From positions 62,001-126,000 of the IMG/VR virus record IMGVR_UViG_3300032242_002454: DNA of 64,000 bases. One strand, given 5' to 3'. Positions 38,542 through 57,690 of the stretch are shown one piece after another (the stretch's first letter is position 1; each line of letters begins with the position of its first letter). The notes beneath the pieces are model-generated. The model was not told the origin of the DNA, ran no database searches, and saw only the letters and a list, made by a program, of their open reading frames with translations. The translations under genes were made by a program, and so were the position numbers.

Positions 38542-38619
38542 TAAGAGTATATAAATAAAGGACTTATGATCATCTCTATCCGCCAAATTTGTCATAAGTA
38601 CTTATGCTATAATGGTTTA
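38542..38619 (+). repeat. Double-palindrome element E1 (degenerate)
   Basis: taagagtat-N7-aaggactta / 28 nt / taagtactt-N7-aatggttta. Confidence 0.75.
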
Positions 38620-38752
38620 CGTCAAAAATAGAAATATATTGTGTTTGGCATGAAATTATATTTCAAAAATTCCAAAGATTTCTCTTGAAAGCGTCGATAA
38701 ATACTGTATAATGAAAGCACAAGAGAACAAGAGACAACAAAAGGACAAGAAA

Positions 38753-38989
38753 ATGATCACCATCAACAACCGCAACGAACTGAACAGCTTCCTTTATGAG
38801 GGTGATGAGGTTGATACCCTTGTGGGTGTCGCGAACATTGGTGGTGAGTTGCTCGCTGAGGCTTTGACCATGCCCAGCATGGACGGAAATAGCTTCTACA
38901 TTACTTGTTTCTTTCCCTACGGTGATGAGGGTGAGGAAATTGTGGTTGACGCTAACGGCGACGTGTTGAGCGATTCGATCTATTATTGA
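38753..38989 (+). CDS. Hypothetical early protein
   Basis: Promoter at 38685 and AAGGA RBS; track start 38711 lies inside the -10 box. Confidence 0.7.
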   Translation: MITINNRNELNSFLYEGDEVDTLVGVANIGGELLAEALTMPSMDGNSFYITCFFPYGDEGEEIVVDANGDVLSDSIYY

Positions 38990-39060
38990 AAAATCTTTTC
39001 TAAGGTATTGACAAAGCCCTAGCCGATAAGCTATAATAGAATCAACACAAGGGAAAAGAA

Positions 39061-39210
39061 ATGACCATTCAAGTACAAAACACCATTCGCCGCCTAGTTG
39101 CTCGCCACGGTTATTCTGCTACGTTTGTTCAGCACATGGGCGAAGGTATAAGCTTGTACAGTATTGGTGGTATCATGTATCGTATTCGTGGTGATGGTAC
39201 GATTCTCTAA
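39061..39210 (+). CDS. Hypothetical 49-aa protein (not in track)
   Basis: MTIQVQNTIRRLVARHGY...; own promoter (39008) and a purine-rich RBS. Confidence 0.7.
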   Translation: MTIQVQNTIRRLVARHGYSATFVQHMGEGISLYSIGGIMYRIRGDGTIL

Positions 39211-39302
39211 GACTTGATATAAACCCTTCTCATATTCTACTATTGACAACACCATAACCGATAAGCTATAATAGAACCAACACAAGAAAGAAAAGGGATA
39301 AG

Positions 39303-39521
39303 ATGCTTTTTGAAACTGGTTACAAAGTCATGATGAACAACCTTGACAAGATTTTTTCTGCTATGCGAGCTGGCAAGTATCACTGTGTGATTGACCCAAA
39401 GGGCAATGCTCATGTGGGCCTGATCAATGGTATCATGCGTGAAGATGGTAGTGGAAAGAATTGGATCGTGACGGTGACTAACCGTACAGTAAGTGAACAA
39501 GTGTTCATTCACGCATCTTGA
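39303..39521 (+). CDS. Hypothetical early protein
   Basis: Own promoter (39243); stop 5 nt before E2. Confidence 0.7.
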   Translation: MLFETGYKVMMNNLDKIFSAMRAGKYHCVIDPKGNAHVGLINGIMREDGSGKNWIVTVTNRTVSEQVFIHAS

Positions 39522-39525
39522 GACG

Positions 39526-39603
39526 TAAAGCCTTGACCGTAAAGGACTTACGGCGAGGCGGGCGGCCCCGGTTTGATGTAAGTGCTTGTGGGGTAACGAC
39601 TTA
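39526..39603 (+). repeat. Double-palindrome element E2
   Basis: taaagcctt-N7-aaggactta / 28 / taagtgctt-N7-aacgactta. Confidence 0.9.
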
Positions 39604-39610
39604 CGTCAAT

Positions 39611-39626
39611 TGGCACAGTATTTGCA
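39611..39626 (+). promoter_or_regulatory. Sigma-54 (-24/-12) consensus site
   Basis: TGGCACAGTATTTGCA (GG-N10-GC). Confidence 0.75.
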
Positions 39627-39731
39627 TTGCGAACCTTACGAAAATGTAAGGAAACTTTTCTCTTGCAAGCTAAAGAATACTCTGTATAATGTCGATATAA
39701 CAAGTAAGAGAGAAGAAAAGAGGATAAGAAA

Positions 39732-39917
39732 ATGGAAAATCTGAATTACGATCTGGTTTCTGATTGCTGTGGTGCTGGTTGTGCTTTCGAGACCGGTGAA
39801 GGTAAGGATAAGATCGGGATTTGCATGGATTGCAAGGAATGGTGTGGTGTGGTCGAGGACATTCCGGAAGATGAGGCCGACTACATTCCGGGCCTTGACG
39901 ATGGGGAGGGTATCTGA
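39732..39917 (+). CDS. Small Cys-rich protein with acidic tail
   Basis: SDCCGAGC...CMDCKEWC zinc-ribbon-like. Confidence 0.7.
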   Translation: MENLNYDLVSDCCGAGCAFETGEGKDKIGICMDCKEWCGVVEDIPEDEADYIPGLDDGEGI

Positions 39918-40001
39918 ACCTTACGACATTGCAAGGTTCAAGAGTTGACAAGCACCTAACCGATACTGTATAATAGACAAACAAGAAAGAGAGACTCCTA
40001 A

Positions 40002-40133
40002 ATGATTACGCCTATCGAATACGTTCAGCTGTTTGCCCTGATTGGTTTTGCTGGTTTCATTTCCTATACCGTTGGACAAGTGGGTAACGCTATCCACTGC
40101 ATCCTGCACGAAAACGACAACTACAACTACTGA
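40002..40133 (+). CDS. 43-aa single-TM peptide (not in track)
   Basis: MITPIEYVQLFALIGFAGFISYTVG...; promoter at 39945. Confidence 0.6.
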   Translation: MITPIEYVQLFALIGFAGFISYTVGQVGNAIHCILHENDNYNY

Positions 40134-40144
40134 AAGGTTCTCAG

Positions 40145-40462
40145 ATGACACACTTTGAAGCTATCAAGATGGTTCACGGCAAGACCAAGAAAAACTCTCG
40201 TAAGGTGGGCAACAACACCTATGCGGAAATTCTTCCTGATGGTAGCGTGGGGATCATGCTGCATAGCACCTATGTGGTGAAGATTCATCCCGACAATAGT
40301 GCTACCCTCAATAGTGGGGGTTGGCATACTCCTACGACTAAGGATAGAATCAATCAGTATTCGCCTGTACGGGTGTACCAACGCAAGGGACAGTGGTACC
40401 TCGAAAGTGGGGATGAGTACGAGGATGGGGTGGTGGTGGCCGATAACAACCTTATTTACTAG
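40145..40462 (+). CDS. Hypothetical early protein
   Basis: 105 aa; AAAGG RBS; stop 4 nt before E3. Confidence 0.75.
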   Translation: MTHFEAIKMVHGKTKKNSRKVGNNTYAEILPDGSVGIMLHSTYVVKIHPDNSATLNSGGWHTPTTKDRINQYSPVRVYQRKGQWYLESGDEYEDGVVVADNNLIY

Positions 40463-40465
40463 ACG

Positions 40466-40543
40466 TAAGTCCTTGTCCCTAAAGCACTTAGGGCAAGGCG
40501 GGCGGGCCGGGATCGACATAAGTGCTTACAAGGTAAGGGGTTA
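40466..40543 (+). repeat. Double-palindrome element E3
   Basis: taagtcctt-N7-aagcactta / 28 / taagtgctt-N7-aaggggtta. Confidence 0.9.
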
Positions 40544-40550
40544 TGGCAAT

Positions 40551-40566
40551 TGGCACGGTATTTGCT
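40551..40566 (+). promoter_or_regulatory. Sigma-54 (-24/-12) consensus site
   Basis: TGGCACGGTATTTGCT. Confidence 0.75.
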
Positions 40567-40681
40567 ATAGAAAGCTTACGAAATTATAAGGAAGATTTTC
40601 TGTTGTAGGCCATTGACAATGGACGATAATATGTGTAGAATAATCCAAGTTCAGCAACAACAACCACTCAGAGAGTATCTC

Positions 40682-40873
40682 ATGCGATCCTACTACGACC
40701 TGACCATCGACACCATCATCGTCACCGCTTGCTGCGGTGCTTACGCCATCACGCAGAATGGCAGGCAACGCAGTCGCCCGTCGCAACTCGTTCCGGGTGA
40801 GACCCTCACCTGTGAGGGGTGTGGTGGAGAACACCCGGTATTCGTTGAAGAAGATGTGGCTTGGGAGAATTGA
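40682..40873 (+). CDS. Small zinc-ribbon-like protein
   Basis: ACCG...CEGCG; follows promoter 40613. Confidence 0.65.
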   Translation: MRSYYDLTIDTIIVTACCGAYAITQNGRQRSRPSQLVPGETLTCEGCGGEHPVFVEEDVAWEN

Positions 40874-40962
40874 TCCGTAAAAGGAGACGTTTGTATACTA
40901 TGCTCTAACTGCTATGTGGCCCGGAGTTCCCGGATAGCTATCCCTAAAACCACGGGTGTTTA

Positions 40963-41040
40963 TAAGCCGTTATCCAGTAAGGACTTAGGATAACTTGGGC
41001 GGGCCGGGCTTGACGTAAGTCCTTTGCTCATAAGACTTTA
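40963..41040 (+). repeat. Double-palindrome element E4
   Basis: taagccgtt-N7-aaggactta / 28 / taagtcctt-N7-aagacttta. Confidence 0.9.
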
Positions 41041-41144
41041 CGACAACCTTACGGTATTGTAAGGAAACTTTCCTCTTGCAGGCTCAAGATGAGTATGGTA
41101 TAATGTCGATATAAGAGATAGAGAAGAAAGAAAGAGAGAAAAAG

Positions 41145-41327
41145 ATGTTTGAAATTGGTGACACAGTATCGTTCATGTGGGGAAAAGAGAAAAAAGTTGG
41201 TAAGATTGTTGGTTGGGAATATGACGAGGGTAATGTGTGGGAAGTGACCGTGACCCAGAGTATGAACGCATATTTTTCGGATGATAAACTGACTCCCGCG
41301 ACCGATACATGCGAGGTGTCAAAATGA
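41145..41327 (+). CDS. Small SH3/KOW-like beta protein
   Basis: FEIGDTVSF...GKIVG...VWEV pattern. Confidence 0.65.
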   Translation: MFEIGDTVSFMWGKEKKVGKIVGWEYDEGNVWEVTVTQSMNAYFSDDKLTPATDTCEVSK

Positions 41328-41521
41328 GCGTTTTCACTTTTCATCGAATTGATACTCACGAATATGTGGGAATGTTTTCTGGTAAGGATTGGATGGAGGC
41401 CAGACGTAAGGCTAGTATAAAAAGTGGAATACCAGTGGATGATATTCTACCTTGGGCTTTCAATACTGAAACCTTTCCCCTACCTGAGAGGGATGAGACT
41501 CCCCACTACCCCTATGACTGA
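41324..41521 (+). CDS. Hypothetical early protein
   Basis: GAGG RBS; coupled to the previous ORF. Confidence 0.6.
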   Translation: MSVFTFHRIDTHEYVGMFSGKDWMEARRKASIKSGIPVDDILPWAFNTETFPLPERDETPHYPYD

Positions 41522-41608
41522 ACCTTACGAAATTGTAAGGTTGACAGCATAAAATCAGTTTGGTATAATGCACACACAAGAGAACGATAGGCCTAAGAAA
41601 GAAAAGAA

Positions 41609-41794
41609 ATGAATCGGTTTTTCAAAGCAATCGGTGAAGATGGTGAGGTGCTGGGTATGGTCATTGCAGACAACGAGAGTCGGGCGGAAGTCCAGTTTCT
41701 GTTTCAGCCGTGGTGCAGTGTTTTCACGAAGTTCACGGTAATCGAATGCAGTCGGCAAGAGTTTTTCGACAAAGAGTTTGCATCCAAAAAGTAG
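41609..41794 (+). CDS. Hypothetical early protein
   Basis: Follows promoter 41541. Confidence 0.65.
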   Translation: MNRFFKAIGEDGEVLGMVIADNESRAEVQFLFQPWCSVFTKFTVIECSRQEFFDKEFASKK

Positions 41795-41813
41795 AGAAAG
41801 AAAGAGAAAGAAA

Positions 41814-42140
41814 ATGAAAACCAAGTTTCCCATCATTCAAGCTGCCAAGCGTCAAGCCCGTCTGTGCTTTCTTGGTATGGCGATTCCAACTGAAGTGAAA
41901 GACATTGATGGTGAGATGATTCAAGTGGAAAAGGTTCTGAAGTTCAATCGAACTGCCTTGAAGAATATGGGCAAGAGCAAGATGGAAAAGGTTGACCCGC
42001 GGATGATCGGTAGCGAGGATACTATGATCGTGCCAGTGGGCAAGCCGGGTAGCCGTGAACGTGTCGAGGAATTGACCAAGCAATATGGTGTTGTTGCTCA
42101 CCTTGAAATCAGCCCGTTCAGCTTCAAGGGGGAGGAATGA
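41814..42140 (+). CDS. Hypothetical early protein
   Basis: AG-rich leader; MKTKFPIIQAAKRQARLCF. Confidence 0.7.
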   Translation: MKTKFPIIQAAKRQARLCFLGMAIPTEVKDIDGEMIQVEKVLKFNRTALKNMGKSKMEKVDPRMIGSEDTMIVPVGKPGSRERVEELTKQYGVVAHLEISPFSFKGEE

Positions 42141-42188
42141 ACGACTGTACACTAGTAAACAGATATACAGTAAACGCAAAACTTGACG

Positions 42189-42266
42189 TAAACCCTTGCT
42201 ACTAAAGGACTTAGGGCAAGGCGGGCCGCCCCGGCTCGACGTAAGTGCTTATGCAACAATGACTTA
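42189..42266 (+). repeat. Double-palindrome element E5
   Basis: taaaccctt-N7-aaggactta / 28 / taagtgctt-N7-aatgactta. Confidence 0.9.
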
Positions 42267-42275
42267 CGACGACAT

Positions 42276-42291
42276 AGCAAATGCTGTGCCA
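42276..42291 (-). promoter_or_regulatory. Sigma-54 consensus site, reverse orientation
   Basis: Minus strand TGGCACAGCATTTGCT. Confidence 0.75.
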
Positions 42292-42398
42292 AATCATGTT
42301 AGAAATACCTTACAGCATTGCAAGGAAACTTTTTCTGGTCTACCCTATTGACATTTGACGATAATACTTGTATAATGATGAGACAAGAAAGAGAAGGA

Positions 42399-42623
42399 AT
42401 GAAAATGAGAAAGCCTCCGAAAAGTTCGACTGTCAAGGGTAAAATCAATGCCTACGCTTACAAGTGTGGGTTTACGTTTCATCCGAAAGAGGATGGATCG
42501 TTTGCTCTGTTCGACATTCACATGGGATACTACGTCTGCCGTGGTTCGCATGATCGTGTTGTCCAGTTCGTGATCGATGAATTGTGGGCGAAGTATTATC
42601 GGTCGCATCCGACCCCCGTATAG
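42399..42623 (+). CDS. Hypothetical early protein
   Basis: Promoter 42348; AAGGA RBS. Confidence 0.65.
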   Translation: MKMRKPPKSSTVKGKINAYAYKCGFTFHPKEDGSFALFDIHMGYYVCRGSHDRVVQFVIDELWAKYYRSHPTPV

Positions 42624-42683
42624 TGGGGGTTGACGATCATCTGCCAAATCACTACAATACAAACACAAGAAAGAGAGAATGGA

Positions 42684-42923
42684 ATGATTCAGATTGGTGA
42701 CAGGGTTCAAATTGGTTCTAGAATTGGTGCTGATCTTGCGTGGGCTGTTGTGGTGGACATTATCCCAGCCAATGACTATAGAGAAGCTATGTATCGTGTC
42801 CGGTTCGATGTTCCTGTGAACCGTGATGGACGCAGATCAGAAATCGTAACGATCACACCTAATCCTAATGAGTGCTGGGTGGATGATGGTATTGTGTTTG
42901 GTCCGTTTCTTGAGCAAAACTGA
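42684..42923 (+). CDS. Small SH3/KOW-like beta protein
   Basis: IQIGDRVQI...AVVVDI...MYRVRFD; promoter 42630. Confidence 0.65.
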   Translation: MIQIGDRVQIGSRIGADLAWAVVVDIIPANDYREAMYRVRFDVPVNRDGRRSEIVTITPNPNECWVDDGIVFGPFLEQN

Positions 42924-42935
42924 AAGGCTGAACAA

Positions 42936-43121
42936 ATGTTCTCACCGATGGAAAAGATTTGGATGGGCCTTGGATTGCAAGGCGCTCTGGAAATGATGGA
43001 TGCGTCATGCTCCCTGTGTGAAAGACTCACGGAAGAATGTGTGACCAATCCCCCAGTGAAAGATGCTTTGATTCAAAGCATTGCTGCTGAAATTATAGGC
43101 AATCGCCAGAGTAACTCCTAA
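42936..43121 (+). CDS. Hypothetical early protein
   Basis: Its TAA stop is the first 3 nt of E6. Confidence 0.6.
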   Translation: MFSPMEKIWMGLGLQGALEMMDASCSLCERLTEECVTNPPVKDALIQSIAAEIIGNRQSNS

Positions 43122-43196
43122 GTGCTTACCGCATAAGGACTTACGACACGGCGGGCGGGCCGCGTTTGACGTAAGTTCTTATGAGATAACGACTTA
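43119..43196 (+). repeat. Double-palindrome element E6
   Basis: taagtgctt-N7-aaggactta / 28 / taagttctt-N7-aacgactta. Confidence 0.9.
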
Positions 43197-43205
43197 CAAC
43201 AACAT

Positions 43206-43221
43206 AGCAAATGCTGTGCCA
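43206..43221 (-). promoter_or_regulatory. Sigma-54 consensus site, reverse orientation
   Basis: Minus strand TGGCACAGCATTTGCT, identical to 42276. Confidence 0.75.
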
Positions 43222-43325
43222 AAGTTTCTATCCAAACCTTACGACATTGTAAGGAAAGTTTTTCTGGTCTAAGCTATTGACAAACGACGATAATAATGGT
43301 AGAATGATAAGACAAGAAAGAGAGA

Positions 43326-43508
43326 ATGAAAATGGAAGAATTTTCCACTAGGGTTTTGCAAGATAATCTGTGGCTTGAGCAAGTCCGGCTCACTAGAGAT
43401 ACTGATCCTGAAATGATCGAACTGAGAAAACAGCATATTTCCTATCTTGCCACAGAATTGCTCCGTCGGTATCGTGCGGAGTCTTTGTCTCTGGCTAGTT
43501 CCAGCTAA
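43326..43508 (+). CDS. Hypothetical early protein
   Basis: Promoter 43277. Confidence 0.65.
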   Translation: MKMEEFSTRVLQDNLWLEQVRLTRDTDPEMIELRKQHISYLATELLRRYRAESLSLASSS

Positions 43509-43645
43509 CCCTGTCGGGTTGAAACGTGGCCTAGTCAGACTAGTCAGCGAACCCTGTGGGCCTTGTAAGGTTGACAACTAAAGTTTTGCAGTGTAGAATG
43601 TCGATAATAGATATAGGAAAGATGACCAGTAACCAAGAGGAATGT

Positions 43646-43843
43646 ATGATAGACTATATCAAGCGGTATGATTGGGTGGAGTTTGATTATAAGGGTGAGA
43701 ACTATCGTGGTGAAGTTCGTAGGGTTTTGGATAAGCCCAAGGGAAAGATGATGATTGTGAAAATCGGCCTGACCGAATATCGTTCGTGCTATCTTGACCA
43801 GTGCGAAAACATGATCCATGTTGCTAACACGGTGGAGGCTTGA
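43646..43843 (+). CDS. WYL/SH3-like small protein
   Basis: VEFDYKGENYRGEV...EYRSCYLDQC resembles WYL-type folds (inference); GAGG RBS. Confidence 0.55.
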   Translation: MIDYIKRYDWVEFDYKGENYRGEVRRVLDKPKGKMMIVKIGLTEYRSCYLDQCENMIHVANTVEA

Positions 43844-44034: not shown

Positions 44035-44215
44035 CCCAATAACACTGGAGATACAGGGATGTATCAATTTGATTTTATTAGTGTTGCTTTTGGTTATATT
44101 GTCGGTATCTTACTCTCTGCTAGTATGTCACATATCATGTATATGGAGGAAAATGATGAAATCGAGTGACTACATCTTATGGGGGGTATGTTTTACCCTT
44201 GGCTGCATTATGACG

Positions 44216-44293
44216 TATCTCCTTCACCAGTAAGGACTTACGACCAGCCCGGCCCGCCCCGCGAAGCGTAAGTGCTTATGCTGCAACACTTTA
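44216..44293 (+). repeat. Double-palindrome element E7
   Basis: tatctcctt-N7-aaggactta / 28 / taagtgctt-N7-aacacttta. Confidence 0.85.
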
Positions 44294-44597: not shown

Positions 44598-44663
44598 TGC
44601 GATTGCTTTTGTTGTGAGCTATATTGGTTTGTTTTACACTATCACCATCGTGAGGGATTGACC

Positions 44664-44949: not shown

Positions 44950-45027
44950 TAAACCCTTTGTGTATAAGCACTTAGGGCTTGCGCGGCCCGCCCGATTTGC
45001 TCTAAGTTCTTATTCTGCAACACTTTA
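44950..45027 (+). repeat. Double-palindrome element E8
   Basis: taaaccctt-N7-aagcactta / 28 / taagttctt-N7-aacacttta. Confidence 0.9.
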
Positions 45028-45867: not shown

Positions 45868-45945
45868 TAAACCCTTTGTGTTCAAGCACTTAGGGCCGAC
45901 GGGGGCGGCCGGATTTGCCGTAAGTCCTTATGCGTCAACACTTTA
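45868..45945 (+). repeat. Double-palindrome element E9
   Basis: taaaccctt-N7-aagcactta / 28 / taagtcctt-N7-aacacttta. Confidence 0.9.
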
Positions 45946-46818: not shown

Positions 46819-46896
46819 TAACCCTTTGACACCAAAGGACTTAGGGCGAGGTCGGCCCGCCCGGCAAGTCGTAAGTCTTTATCTGACAACACTTTA
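46819..46896 (+). repeat. Double-palindrome element E10
   Basis: taacccttt-N7-aaggactta / 28 / taagtcttt-N7-aacacttta. Confidence 0.9.
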
Positions 46897-47705: not shown

Positions 47706-47783
47706 TAAGTCCTTATCCTTAAAGTACTTAGGGTAAGGCGGGGCGGCCGAATTTGACGTAAGTGCTTGTGTATCATAGGGTTA
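47706..47783 (+). repeat. Double-palindrome element E11
   Basis: taagtcctt-N7-aagtactta / 28 / taagtgctt-N7-atagggtta. Confidence 0.9.
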
Positions 47784-49122: not shown

Positions 49123-49200
49123 TAAGTCCTTGCTGCTAAAAGACTTAGCTCAAGGGCGCCCGGCCGGTTTCGTCGTAAGTCCTTGCTACTAAAGACTTTA
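49123..49200 (+). repeat. Double-palindrome element E12
   Basis: taagtcctt-N7-aaagactta / 28 / taagtcctt-N7-aagacttta. Confidence 0.9.
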
Positions 49201-50379: not shown

Positions 50380-50457
50380 TAAAGCCTTGTCCCTAAAGAA
50401 CTTAGGGCGAGGCGGGGCGGCCGAATTTGATGTAAGTCCTTATCTGGAAAGAACTTA
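50380..50457 (+). repeat. Double-palindrome element E13
   Basis: taaagcctt-N7-aagaactta / 28 / taagtcctt-N7-aagaactta. Confidence 0.9.
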
Positions 50458-51568: not shown

Positions 51569-51646
51569 CAAGTCCTTATTTGGCAAGTACTTAGGAGAAA
51601 TGCGGCGGGCCGGGTTTGACGTAAGTCGTTCTCGCATAAGGACTTA
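51569..51646 (+). repeat. Double-palindrome element E14
   Basis: caagtcctt-N7-aagtactta / 28 / taagtcgtt-N7-aaggactta. Confidence 0.9.
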
Positions 51647-52433: not shown

Positions 52434-52444
52434 AAGGAATAAAA

Positions 52445-53023
52445 ATGAGCTACGTTGGATTGTATGATGATGCAGGGAGTAAGAACGCTTTCTATATTAT
52501 CAAGGATAAAAAGATTGGCCGGAAGCGTGTGGGCTTCAAAGAGTTTGAGAATGAGCAGGAAGCTAAGTTTGCCCATCGGGTTCAAAAGCATCTGGCTCAG
52601 TTTGATTTGGCCCCTATGGTATATGGAGATGTTGGTTTTATTCGTAAACATGATGGCGAAATGACTTTTTATGGTTATTTGACCGAAGTTGCTCGGCCTA
52701 TGCCAGAGTGTAATGATGAAGATTGTTCTGGTGATTGTTTTCAGTGGTGTGAATGTAAAAATGGTACTGCTATCTCTGAAGTAGTTTGTTATTTGGGTGA
52801 ACACGGATTAGACTATAATGATGCCCATAGTGGTAATTTTGGTTATGTTCGACGCAAGGGAAAATGGATAGCGGTTGTTATCGACCTTGGAATTGAGAGC
52901 TTTACTGAATGGGATGAAGATATTTATGGGAAGTTTGATTACGATGCTGATGATGCTGTCGAGTTTGATGACTACGGCCGATGCAATTGTGTTCTATGTA
53001 AAAAGTTTCGAGAGGAACAATAA
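52445..53023 (+). CDS. Protein kinase-like (APH/Ser-Thr kinase fold) protein
   Basis: VGFK Lys motif, LAPMVYG, catalytic loop DAHSGN, DLG as the DFG equivalent. Confidence 0.75.
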   Translation: MSYVGLYDDAGSKNAFYIIKDKKIGRKRVGFKEFENEQEAKFAHRVQKHLAQFDLAPMVYGDVGFIRKHDGEMTFYGYLTEVARPMPECNDEDCSGDCFQWCECKNGTAISEVVCYLGEHGLDYNDAHSGNFGYVRRKGKWIAVVIDLGIESFTEWDEDIYGKFDYDADDAVEFDDYGRCNCVLCKKFREEQ

Positions 53024-53253
53024 TGAGCAAATACTATATCAAGTGTGGAACTCTAGAAATAATTTATTCCTGCAACAAATGCCCACGGGATGCTGCTATG
53101 GATGCTATCTGGGAAACAAATGAAAATGATACACTAGATGAGTATATCTATCTTGATGAACGTGGATATAGAGACTATAAAAATGCTGATGGTAAAACTT
53201 GTGTGTTGCATACTTCTCATATTCTCAAAGATGCTGGCTGGACATTAGAATAA
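53023..53253 (+). CDS. Hypothetical protein
   Basis: GAGG RBS; coupled. Confidence 0.65.
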   Translation: MSKYYIKCGTLEIIYSCNKCPRDAAMDAIWETNENDTLDEYIYLDERGYRDYKNADGKTCVLHTSHILKDAGWTLE

Positions 53254-53278
53254 ACATATAAAACAAAGGAGATATTTA

Positions 53279-53554
53279 ATGGAAAAGAAAGACGTACTAA
53301 ATAAGATGATTCCGGCCGATGATTTGCATTGGGTTGCTGATGAGGGTTTTGTGCTATTGAGTCTTGAAGAAGTAGAAGAGATTATTCAGACTGGGAAGGC
53401 TCAAGATATGTCTGAAGATGATATTATAAAGACCGTAAGATGGTGTGAGAGCATTAGAACCGGACAAGTATTATGGAAAAATATTCTAGCGGGAGGTATC
53501 CGTATTCATCACTTTGAAAATGACGAACCTATCTTTACGAAAGGCGTAGCGTAA
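53279..53554 (+). CDS. Hypothetical protein
   Basis: AAGGAG RBS. Confidence 0.7.
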   Translation: MEKKDVLNKMIPADDLHWVADEGFVLLSLEEVEEIIQTGKAQDMSEDDIIKTVRWCESIRTGQVLWKNILAGGIRIHHFENDEPIFTKGVA

Positions 53555-53562
53555 TCTTACCG

Positions 53563-53640
53563 CAAACCCTTGGTGCGTAAGCACTTAGGGCAAGCGGGGC
53601 CGCCCGGCTTTGACGTAAGTCCTTATCCGTCAACACTTTA
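53563..53640 (+). repeat. Double-palindrome element E15
   Basis: caaaccctt-N7-aagcactta / 28 / taagtcctt-N7-aacacttta. Confidence 0.9.
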
Positions 53641-53696
53641 GAGCAAATCTAAAAATCTTTTAAAGTTTCTCTACTAGACTGGTCGATAATATTGGT

Positions 53697-54092
53697 ATGG
53701 AAACGAAGCAAGAAATCAAAAGGAATGGACAGATGATCCAGTGGGTTGGGATTGTGATTACGATTTTGGGTTTGGCGTATACGGGAATCAAAGATTATCA
53801 AAAAGGTGATATAAAATTCCCTCCCATGCCTCAGAAACCGGCCTTGACAAAGATAGTTTATCCGGTACAATACTGTCTGATGGCTTACGACCCTAATGTT
53901 GACAAAGTTTTTTATCTACACGAAAACGGACAATGGCATGATTACGCTCCACAACAACGACGATACCAGACCACGCCGCAACCATATCAAGATCAAGGTC
54001 AGGCCGCAGTGGCAAGTTCCTACGGGTCACAAGGAACACCGCAATACTATTATGGACAATCGCCCCAAGCGTCTGCGAACCCGATCCGCTGA
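53697..54092 (+). CDS. Membrane-anchored protein with Q/Y-rich tail
   Basis: TM WVGIVITILGLAY; low-complexity C-terminus. Confidence 0.6.
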   Translation: METKQEIKRNGQMIQWVGIVITILGLAYTGIKDYQKGDIKFPPMPQKPALTKIVYPVQYCLMAYDPNVDKVFYLHENGQWHDYAPQQRRYQTTPQPYQDQGQAAVASSYGSQGTPQYYYGQSPQASANPIR

Positions 54093-54142
54093 AAAGCGTA
54101 GAGCTTGCGAGAGTGAGGATTATTGAGTATAATTAGTAGTAT

Positions 54143-54215
54143 GCCAGTGTAGCTCAGTCAGCAGAGCGTCAAATTTGTAATTTGAATGTCGCGGGTGCAA
54201 CTCCTGCCACTGGCT
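54143..54215 (+). tRNA. tRNA-Thr(TGT)
   Basis: GCCAGTG/CACTGGC; TCAAA-TTTGTAA-TTTGA; T-loop TGCAACT. Confidence 0.9.
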
Positions 54216-54281
54216 TTATGAGTCGAAAGAAAAAACGTATGTAAACGCTCTATCTGGTGTATATATTCGTATCCAGAGGAG

Positions 54282-54809
54282 ATGTCTATGATTGTAAAAT
54301 GTAGTTGCTGTAATAAAGAGTTTAATAAGCAGAAGTACGAGGTAATTAAGTCAAAAAATAATTACTGCTCACGTTCCTGTGCAGCAAAAATAAACAATAG
54401 GCTATTTAAAAAGAGAAGAAAAAAAGTTAGGCATTGTACGAACTGTAAGATTGAAATTATTGGCAAGGGAAAACTTTATTGTAGTATTAAATGTCAAAAT
54501 GTTTTTCAGTCAGAAATAAAGATAAAGTCATGGCAGCTAGGAATGGACGATGGATACGAAACTAATGGAACAGTAAGGAGGTATATAAAAAAATTCTTAC
54601 TGGAAAAAAGAGGTCAGAAATGTGAGGAGTGCGGTTGGAATAAAATCAATCCAAATACCAATAAGTGTCCATTGGAAATACATCATAGGGATGGAAATTA
54701 TAAAAATAATATAGAAGAGAACTTACAAATACTATGTCCGAATTGCCATTCATTGACAGATACATATAAGAATATGAACAAAGGTAATGGTAGAGAATGT
54801 AGAAGATGA
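54282..54809 (+). CDS. HNH endonuclease with N-terminal zinc-finger repeats
   Basis: CSCC...YCSRSC, CTNC...YCSIKC, CEECG...LEIHHRDGNYKNNIEENLQILCPNCH. Confidence 0.85.
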   Translation: MSMIVKCSCCNKEFNKQKYEVIKSKNNYCSRSCAAKINNRLFKKRRKKVRHCTNCKIEIIGKGKLYCSIKCQNVFQSEIKIKSWQLGMDDGYETNGTVRRYIKKFLLEKRGQKCEECGWNKINPNTNKCPLEIHHRDGNYKNNIEENLQILCPNCHSLTDTYKNMNKGNGRECRR

Positions 54810-54880
54810 TCCGGGATGGTGAAATGGTATCACAGCAGACTTTGGATCTGCGTTTCTACGTTCAAGTCGTAGTCCCGGAA
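54810..54880 (+). tRNA. tRNA-Gln(TTG)
   Basis: TCCGGGA/TCCCGGA; GCAGA-CTTTGGA-TCTGC. Confidence 0.9.
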
Positions 54881-54884
54881 TTAT

Positions 54885-54956
54885 TGGCGAGTAGCACAAC
54901 GGTTGTGCAAGCGGCTGTTAACCGCTAGGTTACAGGTTCGAATCCTGTCTCGCCAG
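54885..54956 (+). tRNA. tRNA-Asn(GTT)
   Basis: TGGCGAG/CTCGCCA; AGCGG-CTGTTAA-CCGCT. Confidence 0.9.
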
Positions 54957-54961
54957 CTTGA

Positions 54962-55048
54962 GGAAGAATGGCAGAGCGGTCTAATGCATCTGATTACTAA
55001 TCAGAAGAAGTGTAAAAACTTCCGTGGGTTCGAATCCTACTTCTTCCG
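54962..55048 (+). tRNA. tRNA-Ser with unusual ACT anticodon
   Basis: GGAAGAA/TTCTTCC; TCTGA-TTACTAA-TCAGA; long variable arm; canonical TTCGAAT T-loop. Confidence 0.85.
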
Positions 55049-55078
55049 TTCGGAGGCTGATGTTTGAGTTACGAAAAC

Positions 55079-55149
55079 ATTGGAGTAGTTCAACGGTAGA
55101 ATGACGGTCTCCAAAACCGTAGATGAGGGTTCGATTCCCTCCTCCTTTG
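55079..55149 (+). tRNA. tRNA-Trp(CCA), imperfect acceptor stem
   Basis: ACGGT-CTCCAAA-ACCGT; T-arm GAGGG-TTCGATT-CCCTC; acceptor ATTGGAG/CTCCTTT has two U-U mismatches. Confidence 0.65.
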
Positions 55150-55152
55150 CTT

Positions 55153-55224
55153 GGCCCCATAGTATAGTAGTTAGTACGCTGGCCTTTCACGCCGGAGACC
55201 TGGGAGCGTAACCCAGTGGGGTCA
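55153..55224 (+). tRNA. tRNA-Glu(TTC)
   Basis: GGCCCCA/TGGGGTC; CTGGC-CTTTCAC-GCCGG; atypical T-loop AGCGTAA. Confidence 0.85.
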
Positions 55225-55235
55225 TTTGTTTCTGC

Positions 55236-55275
55236 TAATCCTGCGGATTTGGAAGCTGTGGGAATAGTCAGCGAG
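55236..55275 (+). repeat. 40-bp family B repeat
   Basis: taatcctgcggatttggaagctgtgggaatagtcagcgag. Confidence 0.75.
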
Positions 55276-55346
55276 AATCCTAAAGTTTTGGGTGTTGACA
55301 GACCGATATTGGTATGGTAGACTGTTGGAACAAGAAAGGAAACTGT

Positions 55347-55520
55347 ATGAAGAATCTTCGTATCTACGACATTGTGACCGAGGATGGTAAAACTCTGGCA
55401 GATATTCAACTATCCATGCAAGAGGATTTTGAATGGTCGGATGTTTTTGATAAGCTCTATGATTTTACAACCGAGAGCGTCCAAAGTTATTCTTACGAGG
55501 AAATTACCGTAACCGAATAA
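55347..55520 (+). CDS. Small acidic hypothetical protein
   Basis: Promoter 55295; AAGGA RBS. Confidence 0.65.
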   Translation: MKNLRIYDIVTEDGKTLADIQLSMQEDFEWSDVFDKLYDFTTESVQSYSYEEITVTE

Positions 55521-55526
55521 TAAGGC

Positions 55527-55599
55527 GGGGCTTTAGCTCAGTTGGTAGAGCAAGGGTCTTTTAAACCTTTGGTCGTGGGTTCAAGTCCCACAGGCCCCA
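55527..55599 (+). tRNA. tRNA-Lys(TTT)
   Basis: GGGGCTT/AGGCCCC; AGGGT-CTTTTAA-ACCTT; TTCAAGT T-loop. Confidence 0.9.
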
Positions 55600-55651
55600 C
55601 TTGACAGTTGTTGATTGTTGGTGTAGAATAGAGGTAAGAAAGGGAGTAATT

Positions 55652-55828
55652 ATGAGATATGAAGATCACTATGATGGCTACAATTATGACTACGATGAAT
55701 TGGTAGAAAATACCGAGGATCTTGGTCTAGACGAAGAACCTTGGATGGATGGGTATGAGGAAGAAGATGACGAGGTTCCTTCATATGGTAAGAATTACTA
55801 TCCTAGTATTGAGGATGATCAGGACTGA
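55652..55828 (+). CDS. Highly acidic Tyr-rich small protein
   Basis: 23 D/E and 9 Y in 58 aa; promoter 55601, GGAG RBS. Confidence 0.7.
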   Translation: MRYEDHYDGYNYDYDELVENTEDLGLDEEPWMDGYEEEDDEVPSYGKNYYPSIEDDQD

Positions 55829-55890
55829 TTTTTGTGTGTGCTTCTAGGTGGGACTAGACCCTATTCTTTATTCCTTTCTTCTTCTCGGGA

Positions 55891-56418
55891 TTGTCGGTTC
55901 AAATCCGGCCACACACTTTTATGAACGCTTTCCAGCAAGAGCTTGATGATTTTCGACGTACCCCAGACGGTAAGATCATTCAAGGGGCTGCTCATACTAG
56001 CCGAGTATTAAATCACAAATATCGGAATGGTGTGATTATCAAGGCTGTCTGTTCTCTGCGTAAGATTGAGAATGATTTTGACAGTATTGCTTGTTGTGGC
56101 GTAAGTGGTTTGATGGTAGTGCCACAGATTGCGGAGATTCTCAATAAGAATATTATCGTTGTTCGTAAGGATGAAAGACGGTATAGTCAATTTTATATCG
56201 AAGGAGTATCTCCGTCTCGGTATGTTATTGTGGATGATTTGATTTGCTCTGGTGATACAATTAAGCATATTATTGGCAGTATTCATTTTGATACTCCGCG
56301 AGCAAAATGTATTGGTGCATATTTCTACATGGGTGAAGAGTGTGCCTACAATGCTTCTAATTCTAAACTTTTTGAGAAGCAGTTCGGGACGGTTATTCTA
56401 AACCCTTACGCTGATTAG
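55891..56418 (+). CDS. Type I phosphoribosyltransferase-like protein
   Basis: PRPP-binding motif YVIVDDLICSGDT; IACCGVSG; start may be ATG 55921. Confidence 0.8.
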   Translation: MSVQIRPHTFMNAFQQELDDFRRTPDGKIIQGAAHTSRVLNHKYRNGVIIKAVCSLRKIENDFDSIACCGVSGLMVVPQIAEILNKNIIVVRKDERRYSQFYIEGVSPSRYVIVDDLICSGDTIKHIIGSIHFDTPRAKCIGAYFYMGEECAYNASNSKLFEKQFGTVILNPYAD

Positions 56419-56476
56419 ACTTAGGACGAAACCGGGCGCCCCGGCGAGCCGTAAGTCCTTATCTATCAACCACTTA
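56399..56476 (+). repeat. Double-palindrome element E16 (overlaps the PRTase stop)
   Basis: taaaccctt-N7-ttagactta / 28 / taagtcctt-N7-aaccactta. Confidence 0.85.
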
Positions 56477-56578
56477 CGACGAAAAGAATTTTTCCAAAGT
56501 TTTCGCTTGACACTGCCGATAATATAGTGTAGAATCAGTGGACAAGAACGATTGAACAGCAACACGAAAGGGATGATT

Positions 56579-57532
56579 ATGGCTCATGCAGTTGAACAGA
56601 TGATGTTTGTTGGTGCGACCCCGTGGCACGGTCTGGGCAATAAGCTCGACGAAGCTCCCACGGTTTCGGAAGCGATGACCGCTGCCGGTCTGGATTGGGA
56701 AGTTGGTCTGAGAGATTTGATCACGCTGGAAACGAATCAACCCGTTCCAGCCCGTGCGACTTATCGCAAGACTGATGACAGCATCTTGGGCGTTGTCGGC
56801 CCGCGATACACTCCGCTGCAAAACAGCGAAGCGTTCGATTGGTTCCAGCCGTTTCTGGACGCTGGCGAGTGTGCATTGCATACTGCCGGTTCGCTCCACA
56901 GCGGTCAGAAGGTTTGGGTTCTCGCCCAACTGAACCGCGACAATAGCGAGATCGTGAAGGGTGACGAGGTTGGGAAGTTCATTCTTCTCAGCAACTCGCA
57001 CGATGGCACGACTGCTATTCGGGTTGGCTATACGCCGATCCGCGTTGTTTGTGCTAACACTATGGCAATGGCCCATAGCAAGAGCAGTGGTTCCAAGCTG
57101 ATCCGTATTCGTCACACCCGTTCCAGCAAGACCAATCTGGAAAACGTGCGAGACATTATGGACAACATCAACATGGAGTTTGAGGCGACTGCGGAACAGT
57201 TCAAGTTCCTCGCGTCCAAGAACTTCAATCAGGCCGACATTCGTCGCTATGTCAAGGTGATGCTTGACATTGACGGTACGCCGGACGATCAGATCAAGAC
57301 TCGTACCAGAAACATCATGGACGAGATTCTGAATCTGGTCGAAGGCCCGAAGCAGAGTGCGACGGGTGTTCGTGGAACTTGGTGGGCCGCGTACAACGGC
57401 TACAACGAGTACCTGAATTACAACAAGGGTCGCACGGAAGATAACCGTCTCGACAGCCTGTGGTTCGGACTCAACGCCAACGATAACACGAAAGCGTTGG
57501 AAAGGGCTATGGAGTTCGCTCAGGCACTCTAA
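56579..57532 (+). CDS. DUF932-family (TIGR03299-like phage/plasmid) protein
   Basis: MAHAVE...PWHGLG, LLSNSHDGTTA, TPIRVVCANT, RLDSLWFG; start may be 56573. Confidence 0.85.
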   Translation: MAHAVEQMMFVGATPWHGLGNKLDEAPTVSEAMTAAGLDWEVGLRDLITLETNQPVPARATYRKTDDSILGVVGPRYTPLQNSEAFDWFQPFLDAGECALHTAGSLHSGQKVWVLAQLNRDNSEIVKGDEVGKFILLSNSHDGTTAIRVGYTPIRVVCANTMAMAHSKSSGSKLIRIRHTRSSKTNLENVRDIMDNINMEFEATAEQFKFLASKNFNQADIRRYVKVMLDIDGTPDDQIKTRTRNIMDEILNLVEGPKQSATGVRGTWWAAYNGYNEYLNYNKGRTEDNRLDSLWFGLNANDNTKALERAMEFAQAL

Positions 57533-57557
57533 TCCCTCTCAATGGGGGTTGACACGG

Positions 57558-57593
57558 GAGCCGCCACTCAGCAATGGGTGGCGGTTCTTTTTT
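57558..57593 (+). terminator. Intrinsic terminator after DUF932
   Basis: GAGCCGCCACTCA-GCAA-TGGGTGGCGGTTC followed by a T run. Confidence 0.85.
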
Positions 57594-57612
57594 GTCTATA
57601 GGCAACTTGACA

Positions 57613-57690
57613 TAAACCCTTGTCAATAAAGGACTTAGGGCGGGCCGGGGCGGCCGAATTTTATCTAAGTTATTTGATACCAACGACTTA
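57613..57690 (+). repeat. Double-palindrome element E17
   Basis: taaaccctt-N7-aaggactta / 28 / taagttatt-N7-aacgactta; degenerate single palindromes follow at 57715, 57766, 57918 and 58469. Confidence 0.9.

What the first reader, a model, noticed from the sequence alone, without database searches (positions are those of the whole stretch)
38542..57690. 17 co-oriented 78-bp double-palindrome elements with invariant geometry
Each copy is two 25-bp palindromes, TAAGTSSTT-N7-AASSACTTA (often extended by flanking CG to 11-7-11), separated by exactly 28 nt in all 17 copies; the linker is GC-rich in all but E1. Centre-to-centre distance is 53 bp, about five helical turns, so both sites face the same side of the helix. 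Starts: 38542, 39526, 40466, 40963, 42189, 43119, 44216, 44950, 45868, 46819, 47706, 49123, 50380, 51569, 53563, 56399, 57613; most gaps are 0.7-1.4 kb. Outer arms often read TAAA.../...TTTA and inner arms ACTTA/TAAGT, so the whole element is a higher-order inverted repeat with polarity. The SS positions often do not pair across arms (E2: GC versus CG), which favours recognition of dsDNA by a protein over RNA hairpin pairing. The 7-bp spacer between inverted arms resembles tyrosine-recombinase core sites, and the five-turn spacing resembles resolvase res subsites (general knowledge). The roles of repressor array, DNA organiser or recombination site are all inference. No recombinase gene is visible in this window.
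Basis: partly seen in the sequence, partly recalled or inferred. Interest (0 to 1): 0.93.

Follow-up and report, generated by a model that had tools for sequence, protein, structure and literature searches.

The report
Double-palindrome cassettes in phage early region
Seventeen near-identical 78-bp double palindromes separate the small early operons of an uncultured jumbo phage; they look like duplex-DNA sites for an unidentified protein, each joined to a strong promoter, and they also serve as recombination points for swapping small genes.

Summary
Seventeen units of 25 + 28 + 25 bp lie at the stated coordinates (30 dyad matches against 0.36 expected). The window is about 64 kb of an uncultured phage whose longest related contigs are 223-238 kb. 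Each unit starts within about 50 nt of the preceding stop codon in most cases. A sigma70-type promoter and 1-5 small ORFan genes follow 30-85 nt downstream.

The same double dyad occurs in arrays in at least 75 related environmental contigs. Spacing is fixed within a contig but differs between lineages (41-64 bp). Across 262 copies the arms show no compensatory change, and the linker folds no better than shuffled sequence. This favours reading as duplex DNA by a protein over a hairpin.

A 97%-identical relative carries one hybrid unit where the window has two units flanking an ORFan cassette, and synteny breaks cluster at the units. The closest known kind is therefore the PeSL promoter/stem-loop cassette of T4-like phages, in a more elaborate, sequence-specific form.

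No binding protein was identified. The best guess is a dimer-of-dimers regulator or roadblock that insulates and coordinates the early operons. The recombinase-site idea is not supported. A sigma54-like motif beside many units remains unexplained.

The parts
38542..38619 (+). E1, a degenerate double dyad with an AT-rich linker
   Evidence: Mismatches 3 and 4; linker GC 0.39. Promoter at 38685-38712 (11/12), 65 nt downstream.
39526..39603 (+). E2 double dyad
   Evidence: Mismatches 2 and 0; linker GC 0.79. The upstream stop codon is 4 nt before the element. Promoter at 39663-39690.
40466..40543 (+). E3 double dyad
   Evidence: Mismatches 0 and 2. Promoter at 40613-40641. Supplies the left half of the hybrid element in relative L123.
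40963..41040 (+). E4 double dyad
   Evidence: Promoter at 41075-41104 (9/12). Supplies the right half of the L123 hybrid.
42189..42266 (+). E5 double dyad
   Evidence: Promoter at 42348-42376 (12/12).
43119..43196 (+). E6 double dyad
   Evidence: Its first TAA is the stop codon of the upstream gene. Promoter at 43277-43305.
44216..44293 (+). E7 double dyad
   Evidence: Overlaps the end of the upstream gene. Promoter at 44358-44386.
44950..45027 (+). E8 double dyad
   Evidence: Promoter at 45063-45090.
45868..45945 (+). E9 double dyad
   Evidence: Promoter at 45985-46013 (9/12).
46819..46896 (+). E10 double dyad
   Evidence: Promoter at 46927-46955.
47706..47783 (+). E11 double dyad
   Evidence: Promoter at 47825-47853.
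49123..49200 (+). E12 double dyad
   Evidence: Promoter at 49231-49259 (9/12).
50380..50457 (+). E13 double dyad
   Evidence: Promoter at 50499-50527.
51569..51646 (+). E14 double dyad
   Evidence: Promoter at 51678-51705. Alignments to several relatives resume at 51585, inside the element.
53563..53640 (+). E15 double dyad
   Evidence: Only a weak promoter match downstream. Alignments to six relatives stop at 53253 and resume at 53556-53560, at the left edge of the element.
56399..56476 (+). E16 double dyad
   Evidence: The first dyad has 5 mismatches. Promoter at 56507-56535. Followed by a DUF932 gene.
57613..57690 (+). E17 double dyad, the last of the array
   Evidence: Preceded by the only strong intrinsic terminator of the region, 57556-57589. 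Promoter at 57726-57754.
57918..57942 (+). Extra single dyad without a partner
   Evidence: 2 mismatches.
39611..39625 (+). Sigma54-like -24/-12 motif (module A), 7 nt after E2
   Evidence: exact TGGCAC-N5-TTGC. A second + copy lies at 40551-40565, after E3.
42277..42291 (-). Sigma54-like motif (module A) in reverse orientation, 10 nt after E5
   Evidence: A second - copy lies at 43207-43221, after E6. Reverse orientation at 10-15 nt is the commonest arrangement in relatives.
39634..39651 (+). Small hairpin CCTTAC-N6-GTAAGG (module B) just upstream of promoters
   Evidence: 10 matches against 2.2 expected. Further copies at 39919, 40574, 41047, 41523, 42308, 43237, 45034 and 45953. Two were flagged as terminator-like.
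40528..40962 (+). Cassette (promoter plus ORFan 40682-40873) present here and absent from the 97%-identical relative L123
   Evidence: The ORFan has no homologue in any fetched locus.
37812..38039 (+). Candidate regulator gene: 75-aa three-helix HTH with a basic RGRP tail, the first gene on the + strand before E1
   Evidence: Homologues in 65 loci. AlphaFold2 model pLDDT 82.6 with three helices. Only weak fold matches, to small-terminase HTH and Myb/SANT domains. Weak AT_hook match, E = 0.019. The link to the element is inference only.
36950..37606 (-). Sigma-factor-like gene, divergent from the early array
   Evidence: Weak Sigma70_r2 and PHROG sigma-factor matches. The family is conserved beside arrays of the 50-, 52-, 53- and 58-bp classes.

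Best explanation
The 17 units are the conserved upstream half of an intergenic regulatory cassette. The cassette is repeated through the early, host-takeover-type region of an uncultured phage whose longest related contigs are 223-238 kb.

Each cassette reads as follows: stop codon of the previous operon; dyad 1; GC box; dyad 2; optional small modules; an A/T-rich tract; a near-consensus sigma70 promoter; a Shine-Dalgarno sequence; and 1-5 small ORFan genes.

Shown: this anatomy; the fixed geometry; conservation of the element across hundreds of related contigs; the absence of any pairing signal; and the use of the repeats as exchange points for gene cassettes.

Inferred: the double dyad is read as duplex DNA by a sequence-specific protein. 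The most likely form is two dimers on four TAAGTCCTT-type half-sites, held at a distance fixed for each lineage. Bound between consecutive transcription units, the protein would act as a boundary. It would stop read-through from the upstream unit, as a roadblock does in the manner of mycobacteriophage stoperators. It may also switch the neighbouring early promoters together. One factor would then control the whole array.

Because the copies are so alike, ordinary homologous recombination between them adds, deletes or exchanges ORFan cassettes, as PeSL elements do in T4-like phages. The binding protein is unknown. A conserved 75-aa HTH protein encoded at the head of the array is only a candidate.
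For: Non-random and exact geometry.

Position: every unit lies between a stop codon and a sigma70-type promoter on the same side.

Few intrinsic terminators: they are close to chance level in the 20-kb array, 19 found against 14.2 expected, and only one is strong.

Family-wide conservation: 262 distinct 53-spaced copies in 75 loci share invariant TAA/TT/AA/TTA positions and symmetric T-G-CG flanks. Each dyad therefore spans about 37 bp.

No pairing signal: there is no compensatory change at variable arm positions and no long-range complementarity, apart from one flanking pair.

Weak folding: RNA folding of the linker is no better than shuffles (z = +0.14), and the dyads fold weakly (z = -1.0 to -1.7).

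Strand symmetry: the GC-core words occur in both orientations.

Spacing: invariant within a contig and lineage-specific between contigs.

Recombination role: L123 carries a hybrid of E3 and E4. A second event has its exchange point in the promoter region. Of 148 synteny break ends, 27% fall in elements that cover 8.6% of the region. The cassette genes are ORFans.

Precedents: PeSLs (PMC2839356, PMC4122927) and stoperators (PMC9283540).
Against: No binding protein was identified, and all early proteins are ORFans.

The dyads lie 30-85 bp upstream of the -35 hexamer at variable distance. That is unusual for a simple repressor.

About half of the roughly 32 strong promoters in the region have no element.

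Some lineages have out-of-phase spacings of 48-51 or 58 bp.

In other lineages the dyads are perfect 11-3-11 palindromes and the linker is a clear GC hairpin (z about -6). A structural role cannot be excluded there.

The sequences compared are related contigs, not independent samples. There is no expression or binding data, and the host is unknown.
Confidence: 0.45

Rival explanations
1. The element is a structural terminator or attenuator, the stem-loop part of a PeSL-type cassette. The two dyads and the GC core would form hairpins in the transcript, or cruciforms in DNA, that end each operon. In this view sequence conservation only reflects recent duplication and gene conversion.
For: The elements sit at operon ends, and ordinary intrinsic terminators are close to chance level in the array. 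In the 41-, 50- and 58-bp lineages the dyads are near-perfect 11-3-11 palindromes, and the linker is a GC hairpin with loop changes (z about -6). PeSL stem-loops are G-run/C-run hairpins shown to terminate transcription (PMC2839356). Bacterial sequences that match the dyad are mostly extended hairpins just after tRNA or tmRNA genes.
Against: In the window's lineage there is no covariation at all in 262 copies. The linker folds no better than shuffles, and the dyad hairpins are only -4 to -6 kcal/mol. No U tract follows. The S positions keep their composition but not their pairing. The half-sites are conserved across lineages that share almost no early genes, which duplication within one genome cannot explain.
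Confidence: 0.17
2. The double dyad is an upstream activator sequence for a sigma54 enhancer-binding protein, and the adjacent TTGGCAC-N5-TTGC motifs are sigma54 promoters. The cassettes would then be phage enhancers.
For: Four exact -24/-12 motifs occur in the window, all within 10 nt of dyad 2. There are 136 such motifs in 846 kb of related loci, where a few would be expected by my estimate, and most lie beside elements. The consensus ttTGGCAcG-N4-TTGC fits the published sigma54 consensus, which I cite from general knowledge. Locus L035 has 2-3 tandem copies after every double dyad. Tandem dyads on one helix face are typical of binding sites for these activators (general knowledge).
Against: Only 72 of 260 cassettes have the motif. 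About three quarters of the instances point back toward the element from only 10-15 nt away, which is too close and on the wrong side for looping activation. In L035 the -12 part reads TTGAA, without the conserved GC. No GAFTGA-type activator gene was found in any phage sequence held. Every cassette in the window has a sigma70-type promoter match (8-12 of 12; weak at E15), which needs no activator.
Confidence: 0.12
3. The units are sites for a site-specific recombinase, either res-like or tyrosine-recombinase core sites.
For: The arms are inverted around a 7-bp spacer. The 53-bp centre distance equals the site I-II distance of Tn3 res (general knowledge). One exchange maps to the central GC core.
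Against: No recombinase was found among the ORFs scanned. The spacers differ between copies. The core occurs in both orientations within one co-linear array. A second exchange maps to the promoter, outside the element. Spacing varies from 41 to 64 bp among relatives. Seventeen direct repeats of an active site would be unstable.
Confidence: 0.04
4. The units are centromere-like, replication or DNA-organising sites. Examples would be arrays bound by a ParB/KorB-type protein or gyrase/BIME-like sites, with only indirect effects on transcription.
For: There are many evenly spread palindromes, about one per 1.1 kb. Their position upstream of promoters resembles KorB operators of RK2. The paired palindromes with a fixed linker at operon ends resemble BIMEs (general knowledge).
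Against: No ParB-like, RAYT or replication gene was seen in the sequence held. The elements are confined to one roughly 20-kb early region and are tied to promoters. There is no hairpin signal of the kind REP elements show.
Confidence: 0.07

Closest known systems
PeSL (promoter-early stem-loop) cassettes of T4-like phages (Arbiol et al. 2010, PMC2839356; Comeau et al. 2014, PMC4122927)
   Same: Both are repeated composite motifs in intergenic spaces of a hyperplastic early region full of small ORFans. Both have a near-consensus sigma70 promoter preceded by an A/T-rich tract and, further upstream, a G/C-rich element at the end of the previous unit. In both, indels and replacements between close relatives are bounded by the repeats, with exchange points at various places inside them.
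   Different: The upstream part here is not a simple G-run/C-run hairpin. It is two 25-37-bp dyads of conserved sequence at an exact distance around a GC box. It shows no pairing signal in this lineage. Its half-site sequence is conserved across lineages that share few genes. The phage is not T4-like: TerL is 24% identical to Bacillus siphophage terminases, and the portal has no match. Terminator activity and mini-circles are untested.
Stoperators of cluster A mycobacteriophages (L5 gp71-type repressors; PMC9283540)
   Same: Both have many copies of one conserved site in short intergenic spaces, co-oriented with transcription. Stoperators are bound by one phage protein that blocks elongating polymerase and represses an early promoter.
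   Different: Stoperators are single asymmetric 13-bp sites bound by a monomer, spread over the whole genome of temperate phages. Here there are paired dyads of 78 bp, confined to the early region, and no repressor is known.
Upstream activator sequences of bacterial enhancer-binding proteins such as NtrC, XylR and NorR (general knowledge)
   Same: Both consist of two dyad sites at a whole number of helical turns, near sigma54-type -24/-12 motifs.
   Different: The sigma54-like motif is missing from most cassettes. Where present it is usually inverted and only 10-15 nt away. No activator gene was found.
Conserved inverted repeats (CIR) with conserved early promoters in Streptomyces phage phiC31, and the dispersed C1 operators of phage P1 (general knowledge, not checked in a paper here)
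   Same: In each case one repressor controls many early transcription units through a repeated site next to conserved promoters.
   Different: Those are single 17-bp sites in temperate phages with a known repressor. Here there are double dyads with a fixed linker, in what appears to be a lytic jumbo phage.
Tn3/gamma-delta res sites and tyrosine-recombinase core sites (general knowledge)
   Same: Both have inverted arms around a short spacer, and the centre distance is 53 bp.
   Different: There is no recombinase, the spacers are not conserved, there are two equal subsites rather than three unequal ones, and the exchange points are not fixed.

Membership tests
PeSL cassette | Strong sigma70-like early promoter inside the repeat | tested here: met
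   Sixteen of 17 units have a 9-12/12 match 30-81 nt downstream; E15 is weak.
PeSL cassette | Stable G/C stem-loop upstream of the promoter that terminates transcription | tested here: inconclusive
   A GC-rich core is present. Its folding is no better than shuffles in this lineage, but it is a clear hairpin in the 41-, 42- and 58-bp lineages. Terminator activity cannot be tested here.
PeSL cassette | Intergenic location in a plastic region of small ORFans | tested here: met
   Gene map. Several cassette genes have no homologue even in close relatives.
PeSL cassette | Indels or replacements between close relatives bounded by the repeats, with hybrid repeats | tested here: met
   L123 hybrid of E3 and E4; L071 event; break ends enriched at elements, 27% against 8.6%.
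PeSL cassette | Excised mini-circles in infected cells | not testable with these tools
   Needs a cultured phage or long-read data.
Sigma54 enhancer (activator binding sites plus -24/-12 promoter) | TGGCAC-N5-TTGC promoter served by the sites | tested here: inconclusive
   Present after 4 of 17 units and in 72 of 260 related cassettes; absent from the rest.
Sigma54 enhancer (activator binding sites plus -24/-12 promoter) | Sites upstream of the promoter at looping distance | tested here: not met
   Most motifs point toward the element from 10-15 nt away.
Sigma54 enhancer (activator binding sites plus -24/-12 promoter) | AAA+ activator with a GAFTGA loop encoded by the phage or host | tested here: inconclusive
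   None found in the window or in any phage locus held. Only part of each genome was available, and the host is unknown.
Resolvase res site or tyrosine-recombinase core site | Cognate recombinase gene | tested here: not met
   None among the ORFs scanned. The small ORFs were not all scanned, and the rest of the genome was not available.
Resolvase res site or tyrosine-recombinase core site | Identical crossover spacer in partner sites and a fixed exchange point | tested here: not met
   The N7 spacers differ between copies. Two exchanges map to different places.
Intrinsic terminator | G/C-rich stem followed by a U tract | tested here: not met
   Only E17's linker (57643-57655) was flagged, as a weak 5-bp stem; none of the other 16 elements was. 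Folding is weak, and no T run follows.
Operator or stoperator array of a phage repressor | Many co-oriented intergenic copies of one conserved duplex site | tested here: met
Operator or stoperator array of a phage repressor | Identified protein that binds the site | not testable with these tools
   Only a candidate exists: the 75-aa HTH protein at 37812-38039.
Structured RNA family (Rfam) | Match to a curated covariance model | tested here: not met
   Only tRNAs were found in the window.

The most novel reading that the evidence does not exclude
The double dyad, GC box and sigma54-like motif together form a phage-borne enhancer or insulator system. A dedicated protein, possibly acting with host sigma54 polymerase, would assemble on about 17 identical platforms. 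It would time or insulate all early operons, and might launch antisense transcripts that start exactly at the edge of the element. Nothing like this has been described for phage early regions, as far as my literature searches show.
Probability: 0.12. Interest if true: 0.8.

Novelty: new variant of a known kind. Interest (0 to 1): 0.6.

Why it matters
The phage lineage is abundant in environmental metagenomes: at least 597 contigs carry a related terminase. It has no cultured member. Its early region is organised by a single, very conserved 78-bp architecture, which should give a direct handle on how such phages coordinate and later silence their takeover genes.

The element is also a ready-made bait for finding the regulator, and a marker for early regions in metagenomic contigs. 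It extends the idea that repeated promoter cassettes drive the turnover of ORFan genes from T4-like phages to an unrelated jumbo phage group. If the sigma54 link were real, it would be a new mode of phage gene control.

Tried and rejected
- **Cultured relatives.** Megablast of the 20-kb region against cultured phages found no match. By protein search, TerL reaches only 24% identity, the portal has no match, and the best DUF932 hit is an unannotated 595-kb metagenomic phage whose first 50 kb lack the element.
- **Rfam.** Only tRNAs were found in the window.
- **Giant protein.** Pfam, PHROGs and PDB searches with the 4023-aa protein found nothing, so it is not shown to be a virion RNA polymerase.
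- **Host operator hypothesis.** The scan of 185,579 genomes gave 82 stretches. The arrays lie on phage-like contigs binned into unrelated MAGs. The single sites are mostly extended hairpins after tRNA or tmRNA genes. One family lies inside an IS element. Neighbouring genes are heterogeneous, so there is no regulon. My estimate is that a palindromic pattern will hit tens of ordinary terminator hairpins by chance in a database of this size, so I draw no host inference. The excess in Planctomycetota and Treponema is unexplained.
- **Literature.** Searches for the half-site sequence returned only primers. Searches for sigma54 in phages returned nothing relevant.
- **Flanking-gene orientation.** My crude ORF caller is unreliable for these small genes, so I discarded that analysis.
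- **The 91-aa protein.** It seemed conserved across lineages, but it is a low-complexity acidic protein, not a DNA binder.
- **Mobile element (MITE).** There are no target-site duplications, the elements have one orientation only, and they occupy one region only.

Full report
**1. The observation.**
The degenerate dyad TAAGTSSTT-N7-AASSACTTA, allowing up to 3 mismatches, matches 30 times in the window. All matches lie between 38,542 and 57,942. Shuffled sequence gives 0.36 on average and never more than 3. At each of the 17 reported starts there are two 25-bp dyads exactly 53 bp apart start to start. Five dyads are more degenerate, with 4-5 mismatches. The 28-nt linkers are 68-86% G+C, except in E1 (39%).

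Each dyad is in fact longer than reported. Conserved T-G-CG and CG-C-A flanks make it about 37 bp.

**2. The setting.**
The window is phage DNA. A minus-strand structural block occupies 1-37.6 kb. It holds a 4023-aa protein, tail fibres, a major capsid protein, and a large terminase at 32,417-34,453. From 37.8 kb onward there is a plus-strand region of very small genes.

The 38-58 kb stretch is 41-47% G+C, against 31-36% for most of the rest of the window and 38% at most. It carries 8 tRNA genes.

No cultured phage is close. TerL is 24% identical to Bacillus siphophage terminases, and the portal has no match. By contrast, at least 597 IMG/VR contigs encode a TerL relative; the 80 best are 78-99% identical. 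The longest of these contigs are 223-238 kb, so this is an abundant uncultured jumbo phage lineage.

**3. Anatomy of one unit.**
The elements lie between small operons of 1-5 genes of 40-130 aa. In most units the element begins between 20 nt inside and about 50 nt beyond the preceding stop codon. Larger gaps occur at E4, E11, E14 and E17. In E6 the first TAA of the element is the stop codon.

A promoter close to TTGACA-N17-TAgAAT lies 30-85 nt downstream of dyad 2. It often has an extended -10 TG and a shared CGATAAT in the spacer. A purine-rich ribosome-binding site and the first gene follow.

Three kinds of sequence can lie between dyad 2 and the promoter:
- A/T-rich tracts.
- A small hairpin, CCTTAC-N6-GTAAGG.
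- In four units, an exact sigma54-type TGGCAC-N5-TTGC motif, twice on each strand.

The region holds about 32 strong plus-strand promoters, but only about half follow an element. Ordinary intrinsic terminators are close to chance level, 19 found against 14.2 expected, and only one is strong.

**4. Relatives.**
At least 50 of these loci carry three or more double dyads.

The start-to-start distance is constant within a contig but differs between contigs. It is 53 bp in most. Other contigs have 52, 51, 50, 49, 48, 42, 41, 58 or 64 bp.

In the other classes the dyad is a near-perfect 11-3-11 palindrome, TAAGTCGTTGA-N3-TCAACGACTTA. The linker there is a short GC palindrome or hairpin.

These classes share few early genes with the window. 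The half-site is therefore conserved well beyond the gene content. Arrays always occupy one stretch of about 20 kb per contig.

Spacings near whole helical turns dominate, in 62 of 76 array-bearing loci. However, 48-51 and 58 bp are out of phase, so same-face geometry is not a family rule.

**5. Duplex DNA or hairpin?**
I collected 262 distinct 53-spaced copies from 75 loci.
- Mutual information is high only between neighbouring columns.
- At every variable arm position, observed Watson-Crick complementarity is equal to or below that expected from column composition. This holds for dyad 1, for dyad 2 and for the whole-element symmetry.
- A scan of all column pairs found a single covarying pair, the two bases flanking dyad 1. 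An alternative hairpin that I had noticed by eye received no support.
- Relatedness among the sequences should inflate covariation, not hide it.
- The linker folds no better than shuffled sequence (z = +0.14). The dyads fold weakly, at -4 to -6 kcal/mol with z = -1.0 to -1.7.
- The preferred GC-core words, such as GGCGGGC, occur in both orientations, 75 against 25.

Together these results argue that, in this lineage, the element is read as double-stranded DNA with position-specific preferences in each of four half-sites. The half-sites are TAAACCCTT, AAGGACTTA, TAAGTSCTT and CAAnnACTTA. It does not appear to be read as an RNA or DNA hairpin.

**6. Recombination.**
Relative L123 is 97% identical over 39.2-44.3 kb. 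It carries a single element whose left part equals E3 and whose right part equals E4. The switch lies inside the 12-nt GC core that E3 and E4 share. Relative to L123, the window has an extra 497 bp, consisting of a promoter and an ORFan with no homologue anywhere.

In L071 a similar event joins the E7 unit to the sequence downstream of E9, with the exchange in the promoter part.

Across all relatives, 40 of 148 alignment break ends fall in the elements, which cover 8.6% of the region. These ends are not independent events. Several genes next to elements are replaced in relatives, and one replaced segment holds an HNH endonuclease gene.

This is the behaviour described for PeSL cassettes of T4-like phages. 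Those are strong sigma70 promoters with an upstream G/C stem-loop. They sit in hyperplastic ORFan regions and mediate modular shuffling, with exchange points at various positions (PMC2839356, PMC4122927).

**7. What I conclude.**
The element is the upstream half of a repeated early-region regulatory cassette. The cassette nature and the recombination role are well supported.

The function of the double dyad itself is inferred. The most likely reading is a platform for a sequence-specific protein, probably a dimer of dimers, placed exactly at the boundary between transcription units. There it could block read-through, like the stoperators of mycobacteriophages (PMC9283540). It could also control the adjacent promoters together.

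I could not identify the protein. The early proteins have no informative matches. At the head of the array there is a conserved divergent gene pair:
- A sigma-factor-like gene at 36,950-37,606.
- A 75-aa protein at 37,812-38,039 with a confident three-helix model and a basic RGRP tail. Its fold matches are weak and point to small-terminase HTH and Myb/SANT domains.

The 75-aa protein is a candidate only.

**8. Rivals.**
A hairpin terminator fits the position of the element and fits the other lineages, but not the statistics in this lineage.

A sigma54 enhancer is suggested by the marked enrichment of TTGGCAC-N5-TTGC next to elements. There are 136 such motifs in 846 kb of related loci, 72 of 260 cassettes carry one, and L035 has tandem copies. 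Against this, the motif is absent from most cassettes. It usually points back at the element from 10-15 nt away. No activator gene was found.

Centromere-like or topological roles have no positive evidence.

**9. The bacterial matches.**
A stricter pattern found 82 stretches in the genome collection.
- Arrays lie on low-GC, phage-like contigs binned into unrelated MAGs.
- Single sites lie in high-GC genomes, many from Planctomycetota and Treponema. They often lie a few nucleotides after tRNA, tmRNA or tRNA-Sec genes and have extended stems.
- One family lies inside an IS element of a Verrucomicrobiae chromosome.
- The neighbouring genes form no regulon.

I treat these single sites as ordinary hairpins that fit a palindromic pattern. 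They are not evidence for a host operator. The taxonomic skew remains unexplained.

**10. Verdict.**
This is a real, striking and widespread repeat. It is best filed as a new, more elaborate variant of the promoter/terminator cassette idea known from T4-like phages. The protein-binding double dyad is its distinctive and unexplained part.

Noticed in passing
window 39611-39625 (+), 40551-40565 (+), 42277-42291 (-), 43207-43221 (-); related loci; L035: Exact sigma54-type -24/-12 motifs (TTGGCAC-N5-TTGC) sit next to dyad 2. In relatives they are strongly enriched (136 in 846 kb). They are mostly inverted, at 10-15 nt from the element. L035 has 2-3 tandem copies of TTGGCACG-N4-TTGAAT per cassette.
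   Followed up: partly
window 38000-58000: The early array is 41-47% G+C with positive GC skew, against 31-36% for most of the rest of the window (38% at most). It carries 8 tRNA genes at 50.9-55.6 kb.
   Followed up: no
window promoters, e.g. 42348-42376, 46927-46955, 56507-56535: Most early promoters, with or without an element, share a CGATAAT-like word in the -35/-10 spacer. It may be a second regulatory site.
   Followed up: no
window 44664-44939 (+): A 91-aa protein made almost entirely of Asp, Glu, Tyr and Gly. It resembles DNA-mimic anti-restriction proteins, and it is conserved in 24 related loci.
   Followed up: partly
window 51055-51552 (-): An HNH endonuclease gene on the opposite strand, next to tRNA-Arg and just before E14. 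This segment does not align in the relatives examined.
   Followed up: partly
window 1019-13090 (-): A 4023-aa ORF at the end of the structural block with no Pfam or PDB match and only one marginal PHROG tail-fibre hit (E = 0.002). Gene order recalls N4-like phages, but nothing shows it to be a virion RNA polymerase.
   Followed up: partly
window 14395-16268 (+), 20539-21417 (-), 35150-36130 (-): Alginate lyase, glycosyltransferase and nucleotide-sugar epimerase genes lie inside the structural block. They may be clues to a host with an alginate-like capsule.
   Followed up: no
L232, L236, L228, L244, L218, L229, L259, L261, L266, L267, L272: In bacterial genomes the same 25-bp palindrome often lies 3-15 nt after tRNA, tmRNA or tRNA-Sec genes. 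Planctomycetota and Treponema MAGs are over-represented.
   Followed up: partly
L211, L252, L263, L264, L271, L274 (Verrucomicrobiae chromosome OX638380.1): Six copies of an IS element (DDE transposase) carry the perfect palindrome about 200 bp inside the left end, just upstream of a promoter-like sequence.
   Followed up: partly
L204, L219, L223, L233, L235, L250, L255 (Phycisphaerae MAG) and L203, L206, L225, L241, L260, L269, L276 (Planctomycetaceae MAG): Repeat families in high-GC MAGs carry a dyad with the same asymmetry as the phage's dyad 2 (TAAGTCCTT ... CAACGACTTA), with conserved flanks. Their nature is unknown.
   Followed up: no
window linkers E3, E4, E6, E14 versus E7, E8, E10: The GC core is a preferred word (GGGCGGGCCGG) used in either orientation between the inverted inner arms. 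Past inversion of the linker, or a strand-symmetric requirement, could explain this.
   Followed up: partly
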